Shown: piece by piece, positions 48,840 through 64,000 of the stretch
Position numbering within the stretch: the stretch's first letter is position 1
Layout of the letters: every line of letters begins with the position of its first letter
Source of the DNA: Iphione sp. A-MEVVRFRX5
Taxonomy: Eukaryota
Assembly (NCBI GenBank): GCA_976226885.1
Contig: OZ320318.1
Location: 26,598,001-26,662,000, forward strand
Direction: 5' to 3'
Length of the DNA: 64,000 nt
Notes under the pieces: model-generated
Database searches by the model: none
What the model saw: the letters and a program-made list of their open reading frames with translations, nothing else
Told to the model about the DNA's origin: nothing
Made by a program: the position numbers and the translations under genes

Positions 48840-48974
48840 NNNNNNNNNNNNNNNNNNNNNNNNNNNNNNNNNNNNNNNNNNNNNNNNNNNNNNNNNNNNN
48901 NNNNNNNNNNNNNNNNNNNNNNNNNNNNNNNNNNNNNNNNNNNNNNNNNNNNNNNNNNNNNNNNNNNNNNNNNN
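48840..48974. other. Assembly gap (135 N)
   Basis: Run of N. Confidence 1.
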
Positions 48975-49843: not shown

Positions 49844-52800
49844 CTAACTTTCTCATGGTTTCACCTAATGGATACAAAGGTTTATAATTATGATTAGGTT
49901 TTCCTTTATTTCTTGGGCCACTTGCACAAAATATGAACGTAAGTGGAGACACGAGAGAGAGTAGTGCGAAAACATCTTGCTTTCATATAAAATTCATCAA
50001 AAGTTATCAGAGGAAATAAACATGCAACAAACATTATAATAACGTGTCCCTTACAACACTGCCGGTAAGCTGACAAAGCATCCTGACAAACATGATCGGC
50101 TATGTGTATCTTTTCAGTGTGTATGTAGGTTGATTAGCCTATACAAAGTTCACCTTATAATACACATCAATCTGTGACGTGCATCAATGACCCTTCCATC
50201 ACGACATGTTCGGGTCTCCGGCCACTACCCTCAGGTCGGCCCGCTACGGCTTCCAGTATGGATAATACACCTCCTAATGGACATGGATGTATAATGTGAA
50301 ATGGCGGTCGTCGTTAACCTTGACGTCATAGGAAGTAGTGATTATGGAAGGTAATGATCGAATGAGTGCACCATTCCGGGAAGACAACGCTGTTTTTATG
50401 AATGGTGTATCCTATGTCCAATATGTGCTTTGATGTTCTTATGATTCATATAGAATCATCTTTCCTTCTCCAACATAGCCTATGTTACTGTTATAAAAGG
50501 GAGGTCCGTTGTTCGAGTCACGTCTTTTATTACTGTTGAATCTGAGACCCAACACAAAACATGTTTTTAAACCACAAGTTGCTTCTTATAAACTGGGACC
50601 TGAAAATAGATGTTGCCGATTATAAGATGTTAAATACCTATGAGAGTGTTACGTCCACTCGGTAATAAAGACACGATCCGCACGCCATTCTAAGTTTACG
50701 AGTTGTTTATTACAAGAGAGGTCGAGATCAACTGACAACTGACTGGATGGGGAGCCAGTATTTCTACAGGGATGATAAGCCCCTCCATCCGCACGCCGCA
50801 CGACACCATCCGCATCCACCGGATGCTGCACTCCGCACATGCCCAGGTAAACATTAGGGCTGTAGGTTGGTGGGTGTCTTTTTCAATATTAATTGATTAT
50901 GAAAGCAAGAAATGTCTATGATAATATCCCTTGTCCGGAAACTGATACCATATGAAAGTCGATGATCGAAGCAACAAGATGGTGTATAGTATGTGTCTAT
51001 ATCTTTATTCATTCTCAGGACATCCACAAAACCAAAAACAAAATTAAAAAGTTACAACTGGCCACAATGTAGGGTCATGCAGTCGGGTTACCGGAAACAC
51101 CGATATTTTTTCACTAGGCCTACAGGAGAACTTGTCATAAATTGAATAAAGCAACAATAAGTCTGGATGTTGGTCCCAGATCTGTGTAGACCCCTGCATG
51201 TAGGCCTAGTGATGCATTTCATCTTCATATTAAGAAATATGGAGAACAATGGATATATTCCCGTGTACACGGTCTTCCCTTGTACACGCATTCAAAATAA
51301 CAGGCAGAGTGCCTCCTTCGGGCCACCTTGATGTCTAAAATCAGTGCATCACGCATAGCCGATCAGCTTATCCTTAAAGGCCTACGTTGTATCTGGACAC
51401 ATGAGTAGGTGGTTTGTACATTCTTGCCCGACTGTTAGCGCATATGCTTCAAGTTAGTCCCAGAGTTAACTAGCTCAGGTTTAAGCCAGTTGAGTTTATT
51501 CTTCTGATGGGATTAATTTAGTGGCGATATTTTAAACGTGCTATAACTCTATCCTTCATCATAGACATGGAAACAAATAGTTATGACGCATTCTCTTTCT
51601 AAGTGCCTGAGCTTTTACTTGGTATATGTTTCCGTAATCCCACCATTGGAAGTGATGGAATGGCCTTGGACAACGTGATATGTTTCGTGTGCTGCCTAGA
51701 TTAAAAGTTAATCTTACTAGGTGAGTAGGATAAGTCAGGCCCGGTTTCTTTACCTCCAGAGCTGTCTATGTGCATAGTGGTGCAGTGCAGTGTATATTTA
51801 AAGAACAGGTTGGTATAATTGCAGGGTGCTCCTTACCTGCATTGGTGTTCAGTTGCATTATACCTTGTTTTACCTTGCATATGTTTGTTTTCACTGGATG
51901 CTTAATAAATTCCGGCCCATGCAGCCTCATACATGAGTAGAACAGTGGATACATGTATCCTTTGTTGGAGGCAACTAAACCTATGTTTAAGTAGAATAAC
52001 ATGACTCTGCACATGTCTACACGTCTGCACGTCCCGATCAAATTCAGCAGTATTTATACTTTTTCCAGCCAAATGCGCAGCTTTTTGCCACTTTTCCTAT
52101 CAACTTTGCTGGTTTTCATATATTTTCAAGTCAAATTTGCCACTTTTTACGTCAATTTCCCATTTTTCATATTGTATCCCTTCACGCATGCACTGCTCCA
52201 CAAGCGCCCTTAATAGACAGCCCTGGGCATGATGCTCCTGGGAAAAAGAAGTACACGGTACCATATGGGCACTGCATCTGGAGGTGACTGCACAGAGAGC
52301 CCTTGTCCCATCAGATTGACATGAAAATGTCACTCTTGCAAAAGTATTCATTATTTAGTCCCATGGGGCTAATTTTCCTAGGATCAAGTCCGGATTAACT
52401 GTGACTACAATCGCTCATAGATATGTCCTGATTTTTCCTTGATATTATGGCTACATATCTCACGATGAAAATACAATTCCTCAGTGGCACCTGATTATCT
52501 CCTATAAATAGATCGACCTACCTATGCTAACTATGACACACTTTCCTGCATTCCTACTGGTAGTTCCATTGTCATGTTATAATTTCATCAGCAGATACTC
52601 TCGTATATAAATTCATGGGTTTTTTATCCATTGCTCGCCATGTCTAGCTAGTTTCGCAAGACTTAAAGATCTGAATCCTGCTTCAGTTGATTTTTCGATA
52701 AAACCGAGAGATTTACTCTGTGAAAAGGCAAACATTTATTTCTGGAATGCTACAAGACAGAAAACAATGTTTCTCAAATGTTCCGAGTTGACCATATAGT

Positions 52801-55800
52801 ATGTTATCATAGTGTCTTATTCATCCCTCCCCACTGAAAAACAGGTTTATGGTTAGCTATATGGTCAGCGTTCCTCACCAACACGCTTCCATTACGGTGA
52901 GAGGAGGCCAGTAGTGACATAGAGAAATATAGAAGGCAGCCATGCTTTAATTTACATTCAGGGCTCGATATCCAAACAACTATGATCTGAATGTAAATGA
53001 TATCTGCATGTATAAAACTGTTACCACTGGTGTTTAAGGCATAATCGACTTGTGAATGGAATAACAAGTGATGGCGGTCGTTCAGTCCTGGCTGTATATA
53101 CCTACATATACACGCCAGTTGTCGGGACTTCATTGTTTTTAGCAGTTGACTCTTCAGACAGACACACCACAACCGAGTAATGATGTTCCTATCACGGCTG
53201 TGCTCTCCCAAAGGTACACATGCAAAGCAATATAAATCTTATATGTGCATGTTATGTACTGGTACCTTAACTTTGAGTTAAAGTACTACTTTTATGCTAT
53301 TTTACGATGTTAACCTTCAGCATACATAACCACTGCTGAATGATACCCATTTGAGTTGACCATTTACATTTGTAAATTCAAGCAATTAAAAGGGCATTTC
53401 TTACCTGTGGACGACTCCATGACTATGGTAAGAGTGTTGACATTTTCCATTCGATGGTAAATGTAGTGGGTTTCAGAAAAGATTAACTGAACCACGTATA
53501 AACATATTGACATAGTCAATCACACAGATTCTCTGAATTTCTATTAAAATCGGAATGATAGTAAAACACCCAGTGAACATACAATCACATTGAATCCATC
53601 TGTACTTCAACTCGAAGAAATGTGGATCTTTCAGAAATTTACGGTGTAGTTACCTGGCCAGCTGACATTGATTTTTTTTTTTAAATTCCTCATTTACCCA
53701 TCGGTGATGATACGAACATTGAAATGTTTCATTTACCTCCATCCGCGTTTACATCACTGAGGTGTTGATGGTCTTCATAACTATTGCGCTTGGCCCTTTG
53801 GCCAATATTTTTGTATGTAAATGTAAAATGAAAGCAATCCTGTGTTGAAGCGTACAACAGTCTCTTATGCACAGATGCTGTGCAGCCTGTATGGGATATA
53901 GAGAAAATAGGGCCATTCTATGTCAAATCAATGGCTTTAAAAGGGAGCCCCTGCACACTTTCATCTCAGATTTTCTTCAAAACTCTTATCAACTCTTATG
54001 TATCCCTAAATCAGGTATTAAGACAAATCAAGTTTTACCTTAGACAAATCTCGTTTACTCGTAGTGGAGTTTGAGATAGACCTTTAAATTTGTGTTCACT
54101 AAGCTAGTTAGAGCACACTTAGAATATATATTATCACAATAATCACACACAGAAATATGACATGCTCATGAACTTGCAAAAATTTACGATATTTACATCA
54201 GAATGAATGTTTTGGCTTTCCAAGAAGTCTCTTAATCAGATCACTCCGTCTTTTTTCTATGCATACTGATCCATTTGATTACTGTAAAAATCTTTTGAAT
54301 GCGTGGAACATTTGTTGCATTCGCATGGAATGATCCAATAAGCAGTTCCCATGGATGTCTCTGGCGCATATTTACTGCCAGGCATTCTCGTCCACCATGG
54401 GATGAAAGATAATTTGTAAGTACAAAATTAACGTCTTTTTATCCTCGAACGAGTGTAACCTTTTTCAGTGCTAAGGCGTTCTCATTCTGAGTCCTCCGTT
54501 TGAACGTCATGATAGGTACTCCGACTACAATTTCTATGGATTTTCTCCGTTGAATGGATGGACATTGCACATACCAGATAGCATTTCTGTGTCCAGCCAC
54601 TGTTCACCACTTTTTAACAGGCGGCGGGCCCTTCAGTTGGTGGCAAGGATGCATTGAGTAAGTCTAAGAGCCTGAGCTGGCCTGTGTGCAGAGGCCATGA
54701 AGGTCGTACCAACTCAACCCAATTACCAGTGCTCCCCGCTAGGATAGAGAGGGAACCACAGGGATACGCTTCTACAGTGGGCAGGCAGTCTTTCACATCT
54801 GTCCCTTATCTCTCAACACTGGTGTCCTTTATCACCTATATCTGCATAAGGACTTTCTATACTGTACACGAGCCACTAAAACATTCCTCGATGACAGCTT
54901 GTCTGTCAAAGATATATAACCCAGCAGGTCTCTGGGGTATATCGGTATCTCTGTCCTTAGCGTGATGTAAGATATTTAAAGATATAGTTGCTGAAATGGT
55001 CGGGAAAGTTTTTCGTTAACCTAAAGTCGTGCGGTACTCTGGCGTTGAGACCGCAAGTCTCGACAAGCAGACCTGGGGCCTTTGATGGGGGTACTCTTAC
55101 ACCACACCACACTAGCTAAACCTAAAAAAGCTGCTAGTGAAAGAATGCCACATAGATGCAAAGCATAAAGGTAGCGTTATTTAGGTAAATTTCTTGCAAC
55201 TGAGCCATGCCTGTGTGAATTGTGCATTTTCAGGTAATTTCCAAACCAAACCTGTGAATTGCAAAGTTTCTTTTTGTAGAATTCACTGACTGACCCATAA
55301 CTCTGTAAATTATGTAGCTTTTAGGCAAATATGCAAATTAATGTATTTTATTTCATGGTATCTGAAAGGTGGAGGGCCAAGTGCCTACGATGCACTGCAT
55401 TATAACCACCCACCCAGAGCTGACTTGACCAGTGAGGCTAGTTGATATGTCTGGCCTCCCGAGTCCATTTGTCCTCCTCATGCCATGTCCACAAGAGGTA
55501 CATTTACAGATGACCTTGTCAGATCATTGCTGTCGTAATGACACAGCTGGTCGACACTCAGCTTGGAGAGCACCAAAGGAAGAGAGAAGAGGGAGAATAA
55601 AGAAACAGAAGAATGGGAGAAAGAAGAAAACGGGAAATACAAAGGGGCAGATTAACCCATCTAGTGCGTGAGGAATGAATTCAGTTCCATAGCAGCAGCC
55701 CAACGCCAGTTAGATCGGTTGAACTCGTCTTATCCCAGAGATGGCGCCATCTTCTTTAGTGGAAATGACCCAACAGTGTGGTCGAGTTCATAACCTTATT

Positions 55801-56570
55801 TCAAACTTAAGGAATTTATAAGACGTGGGGAAATCATACTGGAGCCAGAGAAGTTGTCCTGGAATACTATCCAGAATCAAACCTAACTTTTGAAGAACAA
55901 ACACGAATACGGTGGATGTTGCAAATTTATTAATACACGTGCAAGTGCTATATTGACAAAGGTTAAGGTAAGGACATTTTGAAGACAGGCCAAATACTAG
56001 CCGCACTAACCTATATGGCACAGGGTAGTAGGCATTAAAGTGACCATATAATAGAGCTATTATCAGAACGACACACCTAGCATTACATAGTCCAAGTCGG
56101 AATTTCCTAAATAAAATGGAATACAGGCAAATATTGACGGGCATGCAATGCTTATATCGTACCATACTGACTTATTGTAGAAGCTCCCAGCCTGGATAAA
56201 CAACCTGCATCGACCAAATAACCCACAAAACCCTCTGATAGTCCTTACAATCACCAGGTTTAGGATATAATAGCAACAGTTAACCCGAAGGTGATAAATA
56301 TGTTATTGAAGTATAATACTATTACGAACCAAAGAATATATCAATTGCCTTAAAAAGGAGAATTCCTTCAATCCGTCCTCTAGCACTTGCCTATTAGGTT
56401 TTCAGGATAGCGGTTATAGTAATTGTTCTGCGCAGGGCAATAACTTCTCTCGATTAACTAGGCGGTGGCGGTGGCGGTGGGACTGCGGCGCCTAGCCACA
56501 GCCAGAGGCGGGCCTTCCAAGGCCGGGCCTTCGGGCCGTGGAGGTAGGATCTTGACGGAAGCCTGGTGCT

Positions 56571-56852
56571 CTACTCGCCGACGATCTTCTCTTCTACCTT
56601 CACCAGGAACTCCACCGTCTCCTCGTTCACCTCCTCGCTGGCACTCTCCAGCTGGTCCGTGTCGACCCCCCGCAGCTCGAGGCGCTTGTCCTTCTCCTGC
56701 TGCCACTCCTTGACGGAGCGCGCCTTCCACTTCTCGTAGTCGGACATCATCTCCCGCCGCTTCTCGATCTGCTCCTTGGAGGCCTTCGACTCGCGCATCT
56801 TGTCCTCCAGCTGGAAGCGCGGGTAGTACTTCTTGATGTTCTTCTTGATCTC
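56571..56852 (-). CDS. EIF3B: eIF3b last coding exon
   Basis: [27 protein letters not shown]...[10 protein letters not shown]...[16 protein letters not shown]; acacag acceptor. Confidence 0.97.
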   Translation of the reverse strand, partial: EIKKNIKKYYPRFQLEDKMRESKASKEQIEKRREMMSDYEKWKARSVKEWQQEKDKRLELRGVDTDQLESASEEVNEETVEFLVKVEEKIVGE

Positions 56853-59800
56853 CTGTGTAAGTAAGAAGGCGGGTTTTAAGTTCACCTCTGAGGGAACCCC
56901 AAAATACAAACATTTTAACACAACTTTTTGTGGTTAGTAGTCACCACAATGAATATCCGCATTTAAATGTTACATGATTTTTATGTATAAGAAAACCATC
57001 CTACCCGGTCGCTCCAGATTTATTCTGGAGGTTTAAATCACCACAATCGAAATTTGAATGACACTTAATTATGGTGATCCGAAATGGAGCCAAGCCGGGA
57101 GGGGGGGGGCGGCGAATTTTGATACTTGACCCAAAAAATTCAAGTACCTTGCAAATATATCAGTGGTAGCGACAAAAAAGGAAATAGTTTTCAAATGAAC
57201 TCTTAACGTTTGCGTGAAGAGACTGGTATTTGAGCATCCAGCACGCGTGTATATCAGTAGTTGTCTCAGCCTGACGTGCGTTTTCCACATAAGGATTGAG
57301 CTTGCGATAAAATCTTCATCATTGACAACTGTGGACTCATTTAAATCTTGGCAACTTTGAAATTACACGTTCGACATAGTTGCGTATGAAGAAACCGTGC
57401 AAACTTTTCACTGGTGGGTTGGAATCGTCAATATTGTCATTACCTCGGCGCGTTCATTCTTTGGCACTCACCTTAAGCTTGGCGTCGGTGAGGAGGGTGG
57501 CTGGTCGAGGACGCCAAACCAACTGACAGAAGCGCTCCATTGGCTGCTTTGTTTGTAGTTTGCCCTACAAATTGAATTGATCATGATATAAAAATATACT
57601 GTAGTAGCATTCGATGGTGATACATACAGACTCTTCCTAACTTGCTTTGTTGCCTACTCAACAGGTAATATAAGTCATGAGAAATGCAGTCGTTGAAGGG
57701 ATTTTTTCGGTCTTCATGTGGTAATCACTGGCCTAGCTACAATAAGAGTCGGTGGTGATGCCATGAGCCAGCCCATCGCAAAGTAAGGGGGAAAGATCTG
57801 GTTCTTGAGGATATGGTAAGCTGTTTCTAGGTTGTGAGATACTTTTTATCCGTCTACCAGCTGTCAACACTGCGACAGAAGAAATACTATATACTTGAAG
57901 GGACACAATCTTCACAGTACATAAGGCGATCAGTTGACACTAGTCTGTATTATGAAGCTGCTGCTAACGGGGACGGGAGAACTCACCTGGAAGTTCCAGA
58001 TCCAGTAGGCGTTGTCCACCTTGTGGCCCCACCAGCTGACGGCTGTGGCCACGAAGCGCCCGGTCGGGTCCCACTCCACATCGGTGGCCATGAAGTGCTC
58101 GGCTGAGGTCATCAGTGTCATGTCTGTCGTGTCCCAGAACTCGAGCACACCAGACATACTGCAGGCCAAAAAGAATGGGAACCTACTGTAACACTTTGGG
58201 CATGGCAGAGTGCTAGTCACCGTTAACCAGGGAAAATATGCATGTGTATTTACAATATGAATGAAGCGAGTGACAAGTGTGTGGGGGGCTGCTTTCATCA
58301 TTTACCATATACAAGGGCATGAACCTCTTCTTTTGGACTAACTACGGTAGGGTGCATGGCTATGTACGGAGTGTGGAAGGCAGAACATAAGAGTATTTGG
58401 TACGGAACAGTGATGGGTCCTCTACAGGCTTATGAATTGATGTACATAAGGAGGCTACCTCCTGGAGGACCTAATGTCGATTGTCATTTGTTACTTCAGT
58501 ATTAAAGATCTTTCTAACCAACGTGCTGAGTATGTACTTATTTGAGGAGTGGGCACACCACTACTCAACCAGGAGATGACCGGAGAAGTCTCACCTGCGA
58601 AGGCCGGCCAGCACTATGAACTGTCCTCGAGGACACCAGAAAAGATGGTTTGCCTGCCTCTTGTCGAGCGTTTCTGAAATGTGAAAATCACAAAATCTTG
58701 CTGAGCCTTCAAAATTCGGTATCAAATATTGGACAGTGTTAAATGATCGGATTCCATCAGCCCATGTGACCAGACAGACAACGTAAGGAAGTACTAAACC
58801 AGCATCGTCAACACGTTAATGCCAGCACTAAATATGACTTTCATTGTAGAGAGTTTGTGATTTAAGATATTTTACTCACTGATAATTTCCACGGCGCCTC
58901 CTTTCTTGACGACATAGAAGCTGACCGATATACGTGGTGCCTCCCCATGAATGAAGGCGAACTTATGTCCTACGGGTTCCCATGCGAATGCAATGACGGA
59001 TTCTGCAAGACAAAAACAATTGTATTTATCTTTACTAAGCATCAAAGGTATTAGGATGCGGTGTTACTGATTCTTCTACCTAGCCTTACACATTCAGTTT
59101 ACAAAGATCTGTACTTAGTTCTCCTTTAAAGAAGAGAGGTCTATTAGGACTGTCGTGAATGCAAACTGGATACTAATTCACATGAGAAAAGACTCACCTT
59201 TAACTTCTACAATATCAACCGGTATCTGCTTCTCTCTTATTCTAAAAACGTTGAAATTATGGAAGATACCCTGGAAAAAAAAACCAGAAATTTCATGAAA
59301 GCATTCTAAGGCTGATATAGCCGCTTCACTTGCTAAGATCAAATTAGTATAACACAATTGCATATGAGAGACTATTTAGGATAACAATAAGTAAAAACAA
59401 CGGAAAGGAAGCTTCCCAACCACTAGCTATACTCACGCTGTATTTTAACTGGCCGTCCTTCTCCTCCTTTTTCGACTTGTAGCGGTCAACTTTGACGCAC
59501 AGGTAGTCGCCGGCCTTCTGCCAGTGCATCTTACAGTCGCAGACGGTGAAGAGGTTCTTGACGTTGAGGATGTTCCGGGAAGGCACCTCGATCAGCGTCA
59601 CACGCGCGGGCGTGTCGCGCTCCTCGGGCGTCCAGTAGGAAATGATGTTGTCAGTGGGCGACCACGAGAACTCCCTGCAGGGGGCGAGACGAGACAAGAC
59701 CAAGTGTGGGTTAGCAGGGGCTGGTCATACACCGAACACTAACTGCTGTGTGAATGAAATGAGTCCTTCAATAATAGATTAAATACGACGTTTCGGCGCA

Positions 59801-62800
59801 GGCAGGAATCGACTGAAATTTGACCGGCACTAGAGAAACAAGTCAACACTCTATGGTTACTTTGTGAAATTGGTACTTTTTGTTGCTCATCCCATACTCG
59901 GCGTTACATAAATGTGAGGACTGGTGAGCCTTTATTAGTTTGCTAACAACACTGTTATAGTTCACCTTACAACTGTCCTTGTCTCAGATTAGTCGTTTCC
60001 TCATGTCTTTTTTTATATTTCAGACAGGGATAACTTTGTCACATCATAGACAGCGGCATATGTTTCTACATGTGACAGACACAGCCGTGGACATGATACA
60101 AATTCAGATTACACATTCACTTACTTGAGTCCCTTGATCTTGACACTCTTCTTATCCAATAAACCAAAGGAGGGAGTCTCATAAATGCTCAGCGTGTCCG
60201 GTCCAAGACGGGCGAGGTAACGTCCATCGTGATTCCACCTGTTGGCAGAAGTCGTGAAGTCATTATAAAACTACGTGAAAATTTAAACACCCGCAGGTCA
60301 CGTTTTCAAACAACAGTAACACCAAGTGCAGAAAAAATATTCTGCAGTCATTTTTCTCCTTTGTCGTATTTCATTTTTGTTTAAGCCTTGTCAAATTATA
60401 TGGAACTTACATGCCTTTCAACTATTTTCTTGGAAATAAAATATATATTGCAAGCCAAATCAGAAAGTTTTGCCCAGTTAACAGTCTTATCACTATCAAA
60501 TAGTTGTGGTGTACATTACATTGTGCACTTTCATTTCTTAAATTACACTGGCAAGAGTTACACCAGCATAAAACAAGCCTTGTGTAGGTGATCAACGTAA
60601 TAATGGATTTGTGAGAGCTTTTCTTCCCTTACTTGAATATGGGCCACATGGAGGCATTCTCACAGTGGAAGCCTCGCTTCTTCTGGCCAGTGCGGATGTC
60701 CCAAACAATGATGGCCTGTGGATCGTCTTTGTTATCTGGCAGGGGGCTGAACGTCACCATGTAGCGCTCGCAAGGTGAGAAGTCAATAAGCTGCACACCG
60801 ATGTGGCTGAAGCGCACGATCTGGTGAAACTTCTCGCCACCCCACAAGGCAATACCTTTGCTGTGGAAGGTGGCAAGGTAGGTGCCCTGCGGTGACCAGC
60901 AAACATAGGTCTCTGTCCAAAGCTGAAAATGCAACAGAATGTAACTTTAGGACAGTATGAAGGCTAACAAAAGCTTCTCATATATGTACAATGTATAGGC
61001 AAAACGTGGGTTAGCTGCCTTTTCCCTTATGGCGACGGAGTATGTGTCTCTATATATGTACAATGTATTGCTTTTCCGAGTTTTCGTGAGCTGCATACAA
61101 TTACTATGGGGCGACTGTCAAAGTTCCCTTTGTTTGTTTCAGAACTTGTTCAAGTCAGCCCCATCATTAGCACACATCTGCATGTGTAATGCATACTTAT
61201 GTGCATGTATACATGTATTGTAAATATACTAGGTTTGACTGCTCACGTTACCTTTCTCTCTTTCACCAGAGTGGGCTCCCCGTGCGAGTTCAGCATGACA
61301 GCAGTGCTCTCTCCTCCTTCATAGATGACACTGTACTGATCATAGCAGTGAGGATCTTGCAGCCACTTTCTCAGATCGCCCTGTCATGGTTTACGGGAAA
61401 TGAGTTAATGGTATGAGGATATGGCTGGTCTGGCAGAGGAGGTTCTCAGATAGACCCAACTTGGAAATGGCGCATTAGTTCAAGGTATTGGGGGGGGGGG
61501 GGGAGGGGAGACCTCAAGATTTAAAGGTTGTCTATATTAATCCTATCTCAAAAGAATGACCATAAGTGTTACATTAATATAATCTCAAAGGAATGACCAT
61601 AAATGTTACATTAAACTAGCCAATGAGTTTTTTTAATAGTTAATTTAAGCAGATTCAACAATACGAGCGGTAAATCTGAGATGCGCCTTACTGGATTGGG
61701 ATTTATACTTACGTGGTCGACATAATCTTGCATTTTTGGTGGTTCCCATTCTTCAGAAACATTTGCATACCTATTAAAATATGAAAGCAGTGTTGTTTAT
61801 TTACAAAATAGTAAATATATATAAGGAAAGTTCAGATGAAGAAATAAGTAATTCTGAACAATATGTTCATATTCAAATGAACGTGTCAAGACATCTGAAA
61901 GAGATTACTTCTTTACATTTAAACGCTCCATCAAGACTCCTCCAACATGTTTGAATAAATAAAATAAATGATATTATGTCTGTTTTAATAAGTAGGGTAA
62001 CTATCATGAAAATTGTCTCAGTAAAGATATCTGTCCACACATTATATTTGTTTTCAGACAGGGATAACTTGTTACATCACAGACACAATACTTATTTTTA
62101 CATGCTAGATAAAGTCCAAATGTATTAGAATACTCTAATTACTTGTTCCAGCATAAATTTGGTTCTTCATGGTTCACGCTGCGAACAGGATGTTTGCCCA
62201 TAATGCACTAGCAGGACTGCAAATTTCTACCAAAACCAAATTTAGCCACCACTGATTCAAAATCAAATCATATCTCAGCTTGTCTGTTATTTGTGGCGCT
62301 AGTTTGGCGATTGTGTAGGTTGGATGTCAAGTCTCAAATAAATTATATGTATGCCTATTCGGCTGTAAAATGTTGATAAATGATGGTCACGCACGTTTAA
62401 CTAAAACATGTGACATTTCATTTTGTTTCAATTTTGAAACGAGTTGTCAGGAACTGATGTATGGCGCAAACAAAGTAGCGACTTTGGGTAAATAGTTACA
62501 ATGGGAGGAAAAATATCCAAATGAGCAATCTGTTCTTGCACAGGTATACCCATGTTTTCACTGGAAAAGCTGTCTCAGTTTAGATTTCTGTCCACATATT
62601 CTTCTTTCAGACAGGGATAACTTGTTACATCACGGACAGGCAATATTTTAATCCAACCAAAATCGTATAAAAATGCTTAGGACTCTTTGCACGACCAAAC
62701 TAAACTAAATCTGCCCTGTCGCTTGTGAAATAGCCAAATGCTGACCAATTTAGCAACATTCTAATCTGCTTTATCTATTTTACATCAATGTCAGCTACAT

Positions 62801-63519
62801 AACCCTGCTCAAAATTACGGAAAGAAAATTAAGTTAAGATTTCCCGTACAAAACAAATATGTTGCATCAGCCAAGTTACTAATAGGTACCTTCTTAAAAG
62901 ATATTTTCATGCCAAAATGCTGCTCACTCAATGATGCAACCAACTTGTCGTCTCAGTATCAAACTTTTCCACACATCATTTTCAGACAGGGATAACTCCA
63001 ACTACATCATAGACGACTAAAGAGTCCACCAAGATTACTCTACTTACTTGTCAAAGTCTGTCAGAAGGTTGACAATAAATGTGTGTTGTCTGTCTAGTTT
63101 GTAGCCGTTTGTTGCTGCTACAGCCTCTGCTGCATCCGATGAATTCTGGTACTCAAGAAAGATGTACCTGAAAGATTTTGTGTAAAGAAAGACATTGTGA
63201 AATAGAGTTGTCCGCAGGGGATATCATATAGAACATTCACTGTATATTATGGAAATCAGTTTGATTTCCTTTCCATTTGGTGTAACCGCAACCGGTTCAG
63301 CGTAATCAAGTTGGCGAACTCACCCTTTGGTCTTGCCATTTTCCGTCTTTGGATAATGTTCCGTTTGAATTTTCCCAAATTTGCTGAAGATCTTGCGGAT
63401 AATGTTTTGGAGCTTTTCAAGACGCTCCTCGCCGACGACTGGTACATTGTCGACGACGACTACGGAGTCAATTCCATCTGTTTCGCTGGGTTTCTTCTTC
63501 AGAAGGTCACCAAGGAGCT
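56571..63519 (-). CDS. EIF3B: Eukaryotic translation initiation factor 3 subunit B, 5'-partial multi-exon CDS (13 exons, about 654 aa visible)
   Basis: Exons 63324-63519, 63048-63167, 61713-61770, 61252-61380, 60633-60922, 60125-60238, 59437-59674, 59198-59270, 58880-59002, 58595-58673, 57987-58158, 57472-57564 and 56571-56852. All have GT-AG boundaries with compatible phases (1967 nt in total, ending in TAG). The translation matches the eIF3b RRM ([31 protein letters not shown]), the beta-propeller ([39 protein letters not shown]) and the C-terminal helix. Confidence 0.98.
57259..57330 (-). ncRNA. Box C/D snoRNA with a D-box guide to LSU rRNA CCUGACGUGC (snR72-like target)
   Basis: 7-bp terminal stem AGTTGTC/GACAACT; canonical box C ATGATGA (57322-57316); putative D' CTCA and C' ATGTGGA; guide GCACGTCAGG (57279-57270) abutting box D CTGA (57269-57266); lies in intron 56853-57471. 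Confidence 0.85.
57472..57564 (-). CDS. EIF3B: eIF3b exon
   Basis: [31 protein letters not shown]; ttgtag acceptor and gtgagt donor. Confidence 0.96.
57987..58158 (-). CDS. EIF3B: eIF3b exon
   Basis: [57 protein letters not shown]; ctgcag acceptor and gtgagt donor. Confidence 0.97.
58595..58673 (-). CDS. EIF3B: eIF3b exon
   Basis: [25 protein letters not shown]; tttcag acceptor and gtgaga donor. Confidence 0.96.
58880..59002 (-). CDS. EIF3B: eIF3b exon
   Basis: [40 protein letters not shown]; ttgcag acceptor and gtgagt donor. Confidence 0.96.
59198..59270 (-). CDS. EIF3B: eIF3b exon
   Basis: [24 protein letters not shown]; ttccag acceptor and gtgagt donor. Confidence 0.95.
59437..59674 (-). 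CDS. EIF3B: eIF3b exon
   Basis: [27 protein letters not shown]...[19 protein letters not shown]...KYS; ctgcag acceptor and gtgagt donor. Confidence 0.97.
59980..60052 (-). ncRNA. SNORD1: Box C/D snoRNA, snR38/SNORD1 family (copy 4)
   Basis: TGTCT/AGACA stem; box C ATGATGT (60047-60041); guide AGTTATCCCTGT (60035-60024) plus D' CTGA; C' ATGAGGA; box D CTGA (59987-59984); only snoRNA I found in intron 59675-60124. Confidence 0.9.
60125..60238 (-). CDS. EIF3B: eIF3b exon
   Basis: [37 protein letters not shown]; cag acceptor and gtaagt donor. Confidence 0.96.
60633..60922 (-). CDS. EIF3B: eIF3b exon (beta-propeller)
   Basis: [32 protein letters not shown]...[16 protein letters not shown]; ttttcag acceptor and gtaagg donor. 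Confidence 0.97.
61252..61380 (-). CDS. EIF3B: eIF3b exon
   Basis: [43 protein letters not shown] with AG/GT boundaries. Confidence 0.95.
61545..61614. repeat. Tandem duplication of a 33-nt unit in an eIF3b intron
   Basis: ATCTCAAAAGAATGACCATAAGTGTTACATTAA at 61545, repeated with 2 mismatches at 61582. Confidence 0.85.
61713..61770 (-). CDS. EIF3B: eIF3b exon
   Basis: ttttaatag acceptor; [19 protein letters not shown]; |gtaagt donor; bridges phase 2 to phase 0. Confidence 0.93.
62014..62085 (-). ncRNA. SNORD1: Box C/D snoRNA, snR38/SNORD1 family (copy 3)
   Basis: TGTCT/AGACA stem; box C GTGATGT (62080-62074); guide AGTTATCCCTGT (62069-62058) plus D' CTGA; box D CTGA (62021-62018). Confidence 0.88.
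62571..62638 (-). ncRNA. SNORD1: Box C/D snoRNA, snR38/SNORD1 family (copy 2)
   Basis: TGTC/GACA stem; box C GTGATGT (62633-62627); guide AGTTATCCCTGT (62622-62611) plus D' CTGA; box D CTGA (62578-62575). Confidence 0.86.
62947..63017 (-). ncRNA. SNORD1: Box C/D snoRNA, snR38/SNORD1 family (copy 1)
   Basis: 7-bp terminal stem GTCGTCT/AGACGAC; box C ATGATGT (63010-63004); guide AGTTATCCCTGT (62997-62986) directly before D' CTGA; box D CTGA (62956-62953). The guide is complementary to the conserved LSU rRNA sequence ACAGGGAUAACU. Confidence 0.92.
63048..63167 (-). CDS. EIF3B: eIF3b exon (RRM C-terminal half)
   Basis: tttcag acceptor; [39 protein letters not shown]; AA|gtaagt donor. Confidence 0.96.
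63324..63519 (-). CDS. EIF3B: eIF3b exon (RRM N-terminal half)
   Basis: tgtag acceptor; [66 protein letters not shown]; GG|gtgag donor. Confidence 0.97.
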
Positions 63520-64000
63520 CTACAGTGTACAAAATTAAAGACAGATATTAATGATATTGTGCGGTTATACACTTCAACTCAATCATATGTCTACCTTGCT
63601 TTCAGTACAATATTGCGCGCGTTTCAGCGGGATGAAGCGCCATACACAAAGCAAACATTGGTCTATCAGTAGTTATCTCCCAGTGATCCTACAGAATCTC
63701 TAATGTGAGGCAGGATTCCGAAGCAGAATTACACGTGCATAGTTTAACAATCAATTTATAGGCTTGCAAGCACGGAACACGCTCCCACCCTTGCCAATCA
63801 GACGTGTCAAACTTGACACGCAACTACATGTAGTGACAGTGACAGATGTTAAGCAATTTGAATGGGTTGCTTGAAAAATCATGTGTCAGATATACACAAA
63901 TGTACTAGCAAAATACTTCCGCAATTACTGTTCTCACATTGCAGATATTCTATAGCGCGCACGGCAGCTGGAATTAAAATTTCCCCGCCGGACACCAATG

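What the first reader, a model, noticed from the sequence alone, without database searches (positions are those of the whole stretch)
61771..63047. Three snR38-type C/D snoRNAs packed into a single eIF3b intron
Seen: this 1277-nt intron carries three complete C/D units (62947-63017, 62571-62638, 62014-62085). Each has a terminal stem, RTGATGT, the invariant AGTTATCCCTGT-CTGA and a terminal CTGA, while the spacer sequence has diverged. Their 3' ends lie about 240, 800 and 1175 nt from the 3' splice site. Established: vertebrate intronic C/D snoRNAs are usually one per intron, are released by debranching and exonucleolytic trimming, and preferentially sit about 70 nt upstream of the 3' splice site. 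Polycistronic clusters, as in plants and yeast, need endonucleolytic separation. Inference: this locus needs an endonuclease-type cut between copies, internal splicing, or one-copy-per-lariat maturation. Any of these would be an unusual processing mode for an animal C/D cluster.
Basis: partly seen in the sequence, partly recalled or inferred. Interest (0 to 1): 0.75.

Follow-up and report, generated by a model that had tools for sequence, protein, structure and literature searches.

The report
Three snoRNA copies in one intron
One short intron of the translation-factor gene eIF3b carries three intact copies of a small guide RNA that directs a methyl mark near the ribosome's catalytic centre; this layout is uncommon in animals but already described, and how the copies are cut apart could not be tested here.

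Summary
Rfam's snoR38 model (RF00213) scores above its gathering threshold on the minus strand at 62946-63018, 62568-62641 and 62011-62088. All three lie in the 1277-nt eIF3b intron 61771-63047. A fourth copy (59977-60055) sits in a downstream intron, and an unrelated C/D snoRNA lies at 57259-57330.

There is no room for a constitutive coding exon between the copies. The flanking exons account for human eIF3b residues 232-290 without a gap.

The snoRNA bodies are 76-88% identical while their flanks are randomised, so all copies appear to be maintained. A 20-nt relic of the exon/5' splice-site junction upstream of copy 3 shows that the array arose by tandem duplication across that junction.

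- Earlier scan notes call this genome an invertebrate.
- Intronic snoRNA clusters are a named category (rice, Drosophila, Plasmodium; 48 of 400 human snoRNAs).
- Endonucleolytic, splicing-independent release (XendoU) and sno-lncRNA formation are known in animals.

No RNA run was listed, so the processing route is inferred, not shown. eIF3b loci of about four other animals carry no snoRNA. The scan had already noted the four guides here (s1-327938).

Verdict: new member of a known kind, modest interest.

The parts
61771..63047 (-). eIF3b intron A (1277 nt, phase 2), host of three snoR38 copies
   Evidence: 5'ss ACAA|GTAAGTAG, 3'ss TTTTAATAG|G; flanking exons join in frame DFDK|YANV; residue bookkeeping against human eIF3b
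62946..63018 (-). snoR38 copy 1 (C/D box snoRNA); 5' end 29 nt from the 5'ss, 3' end 1175 nt from the 3'ss
   Evidence: Rfam RF00213 51.8 bits, gathering 45; 6-bp terminal stem GTCGTC/GACGAC
62568..62641 (-). snoR38 copy 2; 3' end 797 nt from the 3'ss
   Evidence: Rfam RF00213 47.0 bits; 63/72 identical to copy 3
62011..62088 (-). snoR38 copy 3; 3' end 240 nt from the 3'ss
   Evidence: Rfam RF00213 52.3 bits
62127..62146 (-). Relic of the exon/5' splice-site junction (ACAA|GTAATTAGAGTATTCT), about 40-58 nt upstream of copy 3
   Evidence: 18/20 identical to the real junction at 63032-63051; best local alignment of the upstream flanks, reached by 0 of 500 dinucleotide shuffles
63048..63167 (-). 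eIF3b exon upstream of intron A (end of the RRM domain, ...YIFLEYQ...LLTDFD)
   Evidence: aligns to human eIF3b residues 232-270, E 8e-10
61713..61770 (-). eIF3b exon downstream of intron A ([19 protein letters not shown]), followed by 5'ss CAC|GTAAGT
   Evidence: in-frame join; fills human residues 271-290
59675..60124 (-). eIF3b intron B (450 nt), host of copy 4
   Evidence: 5'ss CTCAA|GTAAGTGA, 3'ss CCCCTGCAG|G; frame ...KGLK|EFSWSP
59977..60055 (-). snoR38 copy 4, alone in its intron; 69 nt from the 5'ss, 302 nt from the 3'ss
   Evidence: Rfam RF00213 47.2 bits; coordinates
57259..57330 (-). Fifth C/D box snoRNA of a different family in another eIF3b intron (ATGATGA ... CTGA, 7-bp terminal stem AGTTGTC/GACAACT)
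   Evidence: box and stem scan; no Rfam hit; intron 5'ss AAG|GTGAGT at 57471

Best explanation
This is an intronic snoRNA gene cluster. Four paralogous snoR38-family C/D box guides are carried by eIF3b, three in one 1277-nt intron and one in a later intron.

Function: all four keep the 12-nt guide AGUUAUCCCUGU next to box D'. This guide directs 2'-O-methylation of the large-subunit rRNA guanosine equivalent to yeast Gm2815 / human Gm4362.

Origin: the three-copy array arose by tandem duplication of a segment that spanned the exon/5' splice-site junction. All copies have since been kept by selection while the spacers decayed.

Most likely mechanism (inferred, not shown): the copies have no promoters of their own and are made from the eIF3b pre-mRNA. 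Core snoRNP proteins assemble on each unit. The intron is spliced out and debranched, or the pre-mRNA is cut without splicing. An endonuclease then cuts the AU-rich spacers, with EndoU/XendoU-type or RNase III-type enzymes as the known candidates. Finally, 5'-3' and 3'-5' exonucleases trim each piece back to its snoRNP.

Sub-confidences: real and maintained snoRNA paralogues in one intron, about 0.9. Origin by tandem duplication across the 5' splice site, about 0.75. Endonucleolytic separation as the main route, about 0.45.
For: Identity: four Rfam RF00213 hits above gathering; guide plus D' box invariant in all four, against a chance expectation of 0.12. Target assignment snR38 = yeast Gm2815 = human Gm4362 (snR38A/B/C) comes from PMC8817022.

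One intron: splice sites and in-frame join. Human eIF3b residues 232-270, 271-290 and 291-332 are fully accounted for by the three exons.

Maintenance: bodies 76-88% identical (z 10-19.5), while 120-nt flanks are at background (z -1.3 to 0.9). Differences within the bodies fall between D' and D. The inner 4 bp of the terminal stem pair in all copies, with UA to CG exchanges at two positions, and the stem is in register (75% paired against 21-50% when slid).

Origin: a 20-nt relic of the junction lies upstream of copy 3, 18/20 identical, reached by 0 of 500 shuffles.

No own promoter: no shared upstream word except the splice-site-like one.

Internal splicing is poorly supported: only two weak 5'ss-like sites, neither GTRAGT as in all four real donors examined, and no 3'ss with at least 70% pyrimidines.

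Precedent: intronic clusters and splicing-independent endonucleolytic release are described (PMC2780460, PMC11028025, PMC10557570).
Against: No expression or RNA-end data exist: no sequencing run was listed, so neither accumulation of any copy nor a cleavage site has been seen.

The spacers show no convincing cleavage signal. Spacer 1 folds no better than shuffles (z +0.9); spacer 2 only mildly better (z -2.1).

Stem covariation is not significant with four sequences (136 of 500 shuffles reach the observed count of pairs changed on both sides).

Body-only conservation could also come from gene conversion limited to the snoRNA.

In mammals, two snoRNAs in one intron can give a stable sno-lncRNA instead of free snoRNAs (PMC11028025).

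The orthologous introns of other animals (L001, L004-L007) carry no snoRNA, so there is no cross-species conservation to lean on.
Confidence: 0.55

Rival explanations
1. sno-lncRNA outcome. After splicing and debranching, exonucleases stop at the outermost snoRNPs. The main product is then a ~1.0-kb RNA capped by copy 1 (5' end 63018) and copy 3 (3' end 62011), with copy 2 buried inside. Free snoRNAs come mainly from copy 4 or from a minor fraction.
For: Two snoRNAs in one intron are the stated prerequisite for sno-lncRNAs (PMC4234469, PMC11028025). There is no strong cleavage signal or structure in the spacers. A separate single-copy intron could supply the guide.
Against: All three clustered copies, the inner one included, keep their boxes, guide and stem while the flanks decayed. 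That is hard to explain if copy 2 were never released. In human cells only seven sno-lncRNAs were detected although 48 snoRNAs are paired in introns, so pairing usually does not give a stable sno-lncRNA. None has been reported outside mammals in the papers read.
Confidence: 0.2
2. Alternative or nested splicing gives each copy its own intron in some transcripts. For example, the relic 5' splice site at 62142 could be used with an upstream acceptor; a 36-nt in-frame micro-exon at 62143-62178 is possible. Alternatively, a nested intron around copy 3 could be removed first.
For: The relic junction ACAA|GTAATT has stayed 18/20 identical while everything around it decayed. An acceptor-like CCTGTTCGCAG| at 62179 would make a 36-nt stop-free in-frame exon. 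PWS-region sno-lncRNAs and their snoRNAs depend on alternative splicing (PMC4234469).
Against: The relic has T at +5, whereas all four real donors examined in this gene are GTRAGT. No usable donor exists between copies 1 and 2, so those two would still share an intron. No acceptor reaches 70% pyrimidines. A stop-free 36-nt segment in frame is expected by chance about one time in five (my estimate). Constitutive inclusion is excluded by the residue count against human eIF3b.
Confidence: 0.1
3. Each copy is an independent gene with its own promoter inside the intron, as for many nematode intronic snoRNAs, so no separation step is needed.
For: All five snoRNAs at this locus ignore the position of about 70 nt from the 3' splice site that marks splicing-coupled C/D snoRNAs.
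Against: No shared word or motif lies upstream of the four copies apart from the splice-site-like one. Copy 1 starts only 29 nt after the 5' splice site, leaving no room for a promoter outside the exon. All copies lie in the sense orientation of a translation-factor host, the classic host-dependent arrangement.
Confidence: 0.05
4. Only one copy is functional, and the others are young pseudogenes that have not yet decayed.
For: There is no expression data. The cluster is absent from the eIF3b genes of other animals sampled, so it may be recent.
Against: The flanks are saturated with change, so the duplications are old. Even so, C, D' and D boxes, the 12-nt guide and the inner stem are intact in every copy. 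No decayed copy exists in the window.
Confidence: 0.07

Closest known systems
Intronic snoRNA gene clusters of rice and Drosophila melanogaster (Liang et al. 2002; Huang et al. 2004, 2005, as cited in PMC2780460 and PMC3089462)
   Same: Several snoRNA genes, often paralogues from local duplication, lie inside a single intron of a protein-coding host. They are presumed to be co-transcribed with the host and then separated.
   Different: The Drosophila clusters are described as mainly H/ACA (PMC3089462). Drosophila C/D snoRNAs such as DmSnR60a-d follow one gene per intron, about 70 nt from the 3' splice site (PMC1821038). Here the cluster is C/D, in a different and unidentified invertebrate, and no copy sits near 70 nt.
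Mammalian introns with two C/D snoRNAs that yield sno-lncRNAs (SNORD116 region; SNORD49B/49A in SNHG29)
   Same: At least two C/D snoRNAs share one intron, so exonucleolytic trimming alone cannot free them (PMC11028025, PMC4234469).
   Different: Here there are three copies rather than two, the host is a protein-coding translation-factor gene, and no long RNA product has been observed.
snR38 / snoR38 / human snR38A-C (SNORD1A-C) family, Rfam RF00213
   Same: The same D' guide and the same conserved rRNA target (yeast Gm2815, human Gm4362, Arabidopsis Gm2805; PMC8817022). The family is intronic in yeast and human (PMC2656528, Table 4), and it is multi-copy in human (A/B/C).
   Different: The host gene differs. 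From memory, not tested, the yeast host is TEF4 and the human host is SNHG16 with one copy per intron. Here the host is eIF3b with three copies in one intron. eIF3b loci of other animals sampled lack it.
Splicing-independent endonucleolytic release of intronic snoRNAs in Xenopus (U16/U86, XendoU)
   Same: It offers an animal precedent for an endonuclease cutting intron sequence beside a C/D snoRNA before exonucleolytic trimming (PMC10557570, PMC11028025).
   Different: It was shown for single snoRNAs per intron. Nothing here shows that such an enzyme acts on this intron.

Membership tests
snoR38 / snR38 C/D box snoRNA family (Rfam RF00213) | Score at or above the curated gathering threshold of the family covariance model | tested here: met
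   52.3, 51.8, 47.2 and 47.0 bits against a gathering score of 45, full model length 1-91
snoR38 / snR38 C/D box snoRNA family (Rfam RF00213) | C box (RUGAUGA-like), D' and D boxes (CUGA) and a terminal stem bringing C and D together | tested here: met
   A/GTGATGT, internal CTGA and terminal CTGA in all four. The inner 4 stem pairs form in all copies. The last C-box base is U, not A.
snoR38 / snR38 C/D box snoRNA family (Rfam RF00213) | Antisense element upstream of D' that places the Gm2815-equivalent G of LSU rRNA at the fifth pair | tested here: inconclusive
   The guide AGUUAUCCCUGU is identical to the Rfam consensus, and the family's target is given in PMC8817022.
snoR38 / snR38 C/D box snoRNA family (Rfam RF00213) | Accumulates as a stable ~75-nt RNA, and the target is methylated | not testable with these tools
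   No sequencing run was listed.
Intronic snoRNA gene cluster | Two or more snoRNA genes within one intron of a host gene, same strand | tested here: met
   Three hits lie inside 61771-63047 on the host strand.
Intronic snoRNA gene cluster | No exon between the snoRNA genes | tested here: met
   For constitutive coding exons, human eIF3b residues 232-332 are fully accounted for by the three known exons. Rare alternative or non-coding exons cannot be excluded without RNA data. Internal splice-site candidates are weak.
Intronic snoRNA gene cluster | Copies are made from the host transcript and released as individual snoRNAs | not testable with these tools
   Indirect evidence only: there is no shared upstream motif.
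sno-lncRNA locus | Two snoRNAs in one intron | tested here: met
sno-lncRNA locus | Stable non-polyadenylated RNA with snoRNA ends that spans the inter-snoRNA sequence | not testable with these tools
   No RNA data.

The most novel reading that the evidence does not exclude
The eIF3b intron could yield a stable ~1-kb sno-lncRNA, capped by copies 1 and 3 with copy 2 inside, or it could be resolved by nested splicing at the conserved relic 5' splice site. Either outcome would be the first such product described in a non-mammalian animal. It would also link a translation-initiation-factor gene to a structured nuclear RNA as well as to four guides for a methylation near the peptidyl-transferase centre.
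Probability: 0.15. Interest if true: 0.55.

Novelty: new member of a known kind. Interest (0 to 1): 0.3.

Why it matters
The locus gives a compact natural substrate of 1.3 kb, with three distinguishable C/D paralogues and a single-copy control intron in the same gene. It could be used to ask how an animal cell separates several C/D snoRNAs that share an intron, and whether the rule of about 70 nt from the 3' splice site holds outside vertebrates and flies.

It also records how such clusters are born, because the duplication carried the 5' splice site with it. And it shows that the snR38 guide has changed host gene in this lineage.

None of this overturns current understanding. The arrangement and the candidate processing routes are already in the literature.

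Tried and rejected

2. Orthologous introns. A word search with the 101-aa exon and four look-ups gave eIF3b loci L001-L007, about four other animals of unknown taxon. Their exons map well, but the loci have no snoR38 motif and no Rfam snoRNA. So there is no conservation test, only evidence that the association is lineage-specific.

3. Metagenome scan for the guide plus D'. It returned 120 loci, none with eIF3b and none close to these copies.

4. Shared promoter motif upstream of the copies: none found.

5. Extended external stems. Flank duplexes were at best weakly better than shuffles (z -0.3 to -2.05), and single-copy folds were unremarkable.

6. RNase III-like structure in the spacers: z +0.9 and -2.1, not convincing.

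7. Decayed extra copy near 62780: not supported by nhmmer.

8. Stem covariation: present, but not significant with four sequences.

9. Identifying the organism. A paper search for assembly GCA_022702835 found nothing. The 'invertebrate' label rests on earlier scan notes only.

10. Huang et al. 2005 and Liang et al. 2002 are not held in the library, so they are cited only through papers that cite them.

11. Proteins P0005 and P0006 look mammalian, possibly human, eIF3b fragments. I did not fetch, compare or search their contigs.

12. L046 comes from a human-gut metagenome. I did not inspect it individually.


Full report
**1. Observation**

Rfam cmscan of the whole window returns exactly four hits, all to snoR38 (RF00213) and all on the minus strand:
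- 62011-62088, 52.3 bits
- 62946-63018, 51.8 bits
- 62568-62641, 47.0 bits
- 59977-60055, 47.2 bits

The gathering score is 45. A relaxed scan of 50000-64000 adds only weaker overlapping C/D families.

The four sequences share the C box (A/GTGATGT), the guide AGTTATCCCTGT directly followed by CTGA (D'), a terminal CTGA (D), and the stem halves TGTC/GACA. The 15-mer GTTATCCCTGTCTGA occurs four times against 0.12 expected. A profile built from the four copies finds no fifth or decayed copy anywhere in the window.

**2. Host gene and intron**

The minus strand encodes eIF3b. The 101-aa exon ORF 60632-60934 matches human eIF3b at E 1.5e-54, and other exon pieces hit the eIF2A/WD40 Pfam families.

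The intron has these boundaries:
- 5' splice site: ACAA|GTAAGTAG, with the first intron base at 63047
- 3' splice site: TTTTAATAG|G, with the last intron base at 61771
- length: 1277 nt, phase 2

Joining exon 63048-63167 to exon 61713-61770 reads ...NLLTDFDK|[19 protein letters not shown].

The residue count against human eIF3b closes without a gap:
- The upstream exon aligns to residues 232-270.
- The exon after next (~61246-61383) aligns to residues 291-332.
- The 20 residues in between are exactly the split K codon plus the 19 codons of exon 61713-61770.

So there is no room for a constitutive coding exon between the snoRNA copies.

**3. More snoRNAs in the same gene**

Copy 4 sits alone in intron B (59675-60124, 450 nt). 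It lies 69 nt from the 5' splice site and 302 nt from the 3' splice site.

A simple box-and-stem scan also finds a fifth C/D snoRNA of another family at 57259-57330. It has a 7-bp terminal stem and lies in a third eIF3b intron, 141 nt from that intron's 5' splice site and at least 325 nt from its 3' splice site. It has no Rfam match.

None of the five lies near the position of about 70 nt upstream of the 3' splice site. That position is described as optimal in vertebrates and is also seen for Drosophila DmSnR60 (PMC1821038). The unusual spacing is therefore a property of the locus and not just of the cluster.

**4. Are all copies maintained?**

Pairwise, the snoRNA bodies are 76-88% identical (alignment z 10-19.5). 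The 120 nt on either side align no better than shuffled sequence (z -1.3 to 0.9).

Within the bodies, the changes fall between D' and D, whereas the C box, guide, D', D box and inner stem are invariant.

For the terminal stem:
- The inner four pairs form in all copies.
- Copy 1 has C-G where the others have U-A, and a second position shows U-A in copy 1 and C-G in copy 2.
- The stem is in register: 75% of cells are paired, against 21-50% when the 3' strand is slid.
- With only four sequences the covariation is not significant (136 of 500 shuffles reach the observed count of pairs changed on both sides).

I read this as long-standing selection on every copy. Gene conversion confined to the body is an alternative that I cannot exclude.

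**5. Origin**

One flank segment escapes the general decay. On the minus strand, 62146-62127 reads ACAA|GTAATTAGAGTATTCT. This is 18/20 identical to the real exon/intron junction ACAA|GTAAGTAGAGTAATCT at 63051-63032. It is the best local alignment between any pair of flanks, and no dinucleotide shuffle out of 500 reaches its score.

The relic lies about 40-58 nt upstream of copy 3, much as the real junction lies 29 nt upstream of copy 1. The array therefore grew by tandem duplication of a segment that began in the exon and carried the 5' splice site and the snoRNA with it. Copies 2 and 3 are the most alike (63/72) and probably come from a later duplication.

**6. How the copies might be separated (inference only)**

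No sequencing run could be listed for this stretch, so nothing below has been observed.

- *Independent promoters.* The 200 nt upstream of the four copies share no word other than the splice-site-like one. Copy 1 starts 29 nt into the intron.
- *Internal exons.* The intron holds only two sites with at least 6/8 matches to AG|GTAAGT: 62889 (GAAG|GTACCT) and the relic at 62142. Neither is GTRAGT, which all four real donors examined here are. No acceptor reaches 70% pyrimidines. One combination, an acceptor at 62179 plus the relic donor, would give a 36-nt stop-free in-frame micro-exon. By my estimate that is expected by chance about one time in five, and it would still leave copies 1 and 2 together.
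- *Structure.* Spacer 1 folds no better than shuffles (z +0.9), and spacer 2 only slightly better (z -2.1). Flanking complementarity beyond the terminal stems is weak.

By elimination and precedent, I think the likeliest route has three steps:
1. Transcription from the host promoter, with snoRNP assembly on each unit.
2. Splicing and debranching, or splicing-independent cutting, then endonucleolytic entry into the AU-rich spacers.
3. Exonucleolytic trimming back to each snoRNP.

The main rival is the known mammalian outcome for two snoRNAs in one intron. Here that would be a sno-lncRNA of about 1.0 kb running from 63018 to 62011.

**7. Comparison with what is known**

- Target: snR38 guides yeast Gm2815, human Gm4362 (snR38A/B/C) and Arabidopsis Gm2805 (PMC8817022). 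It is intronic in yeast and human (PMC2656528).
[quoted passage not shown] The Drosophila clusters are described as H/ACA (PMC3089462), while Drosophila C/D genes follow one per intron (PMC1821038).
- A 2024 review lists 'intronic snoRNA clusters' as a standard category in animal genomes, while stressing that one snoRNA per intron predominates (PMC11028025).
- In human, 48 of 400 annotated snoRNAs pair within single introns, but few give sno-lncRNAs (PMC4234469).
- Splicing-independent endonucleolytic release with XendoU is known in Xenopus (PMC10557570).
- Plasmodium has two C/D snoRNAs in one intron (PMC2656528).

The finding is therefore a new member of a known kind: a C/D version, in an unsampled invertebrate lineage, in a new host gene.

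**8. Comparative sampling**

eIF3b loci from about four other animals (L001; L002/L003; L004/L005; L006/L007; taxa unknown) have recognisable orthologous exons. They carry neither the guide motif nor any Rfam snoRNA. The orthologous intron A is about 0.7 kb in L001 and 0.45 kb in L004, with no snoRNA in either. The association of snR38 with eIF3b is therefore lineage-specific. This also means cross-species conservation of the cluster could not be assessed.

A metagenome scan for the guide plus D' found 120 loci, none of them eIF3b. Seven have 2-4 copies within a few kb. L031 has four Rfam-positive copies 0.4-0.7 kb apart, and L045 has three. Tandem amplification of this guide recurs in eukaryotes.

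**9. Taxon**

I did not establish the organism. Earlier scan notes on the same genome call it an invertebrate, 'worm-type'. Another unverified note reports four H/ACA snoRNAs in one RPS24 intron of the same genome. If true, multi-snoRNA introns would be routine here and the finding still less exceptional. The scan had also already noted the four redundant guides on this same stretch (s1-327938).

**10. Verdict**

The mechanism is unresolved for lack of RNA data. Novelty is 'new member of a known kind', with interest about 0.3.

Two proteins that look mammalian or human (P0005, P0006) were not followed to their contigs.

Noticed in passing
window 57259-57330 (-): Fifth C/D box snoRNA of a different family (AATGATGA ... 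CTGA, 7-bp terminal stem) in another eIF3b intron. It has no Rfam match. An earlier scan note predicts a yeast Am876 (snR72)-equivalent target, which I did not check.
   Followed up: partly
window 62127-62146 (-) against 63032-63051 (-): A 20-nt relic of the exon/5' splice-site junction is preserved at 18/20 inside the intron, while the surrounding spacer is randomised. It could simply mark the duplication, or it could be kept for a function such as U1 binding or a cryptic donor.
   Followed up: partly
window 62143-62178 (-): Hypothetical 36-nt stop-free in-frame micro-exon between the acceptor-like CCTGTTCGCAG| and the relic donor. It is at chance level and unsupported by RNA data.
   Followed up: partly
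window 61533-61606 (+ coordinates), in the intron after exon 61713-61770: Tandem 37-nt direct repeat, two copies, 84% identical (family D5). Meaning unknown.
   Followed up: no
L031 5239-6942 (-) and L045 484-1510 (+): Metagenome-derived eukaryotic contigs with four and three Rfam-positive snoR38 copies 0.4-0.7 kb apart. Their C box is GGATGA. Each copy is followed by about 70 nt of conserved flank and a long T-rich tract. This is a young tandem array in an unknown organism, and the host gene was not identified.
   Followed up: partly
L002 935-1090 / 1716-1850 and 2435-2803; L004-L007 likewise: eIF3b intron positions differ among the sampled animals. The 101-aa exon of the window is split by an extra intron in L002 and L004-L007. 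The intron that hosts copy 4 is absent in L002, where the exons are fused.
   Followed up: no
window 48840-48974: Run of 135 N (assembly gap or mask). Left untouched.
   Followed up: no
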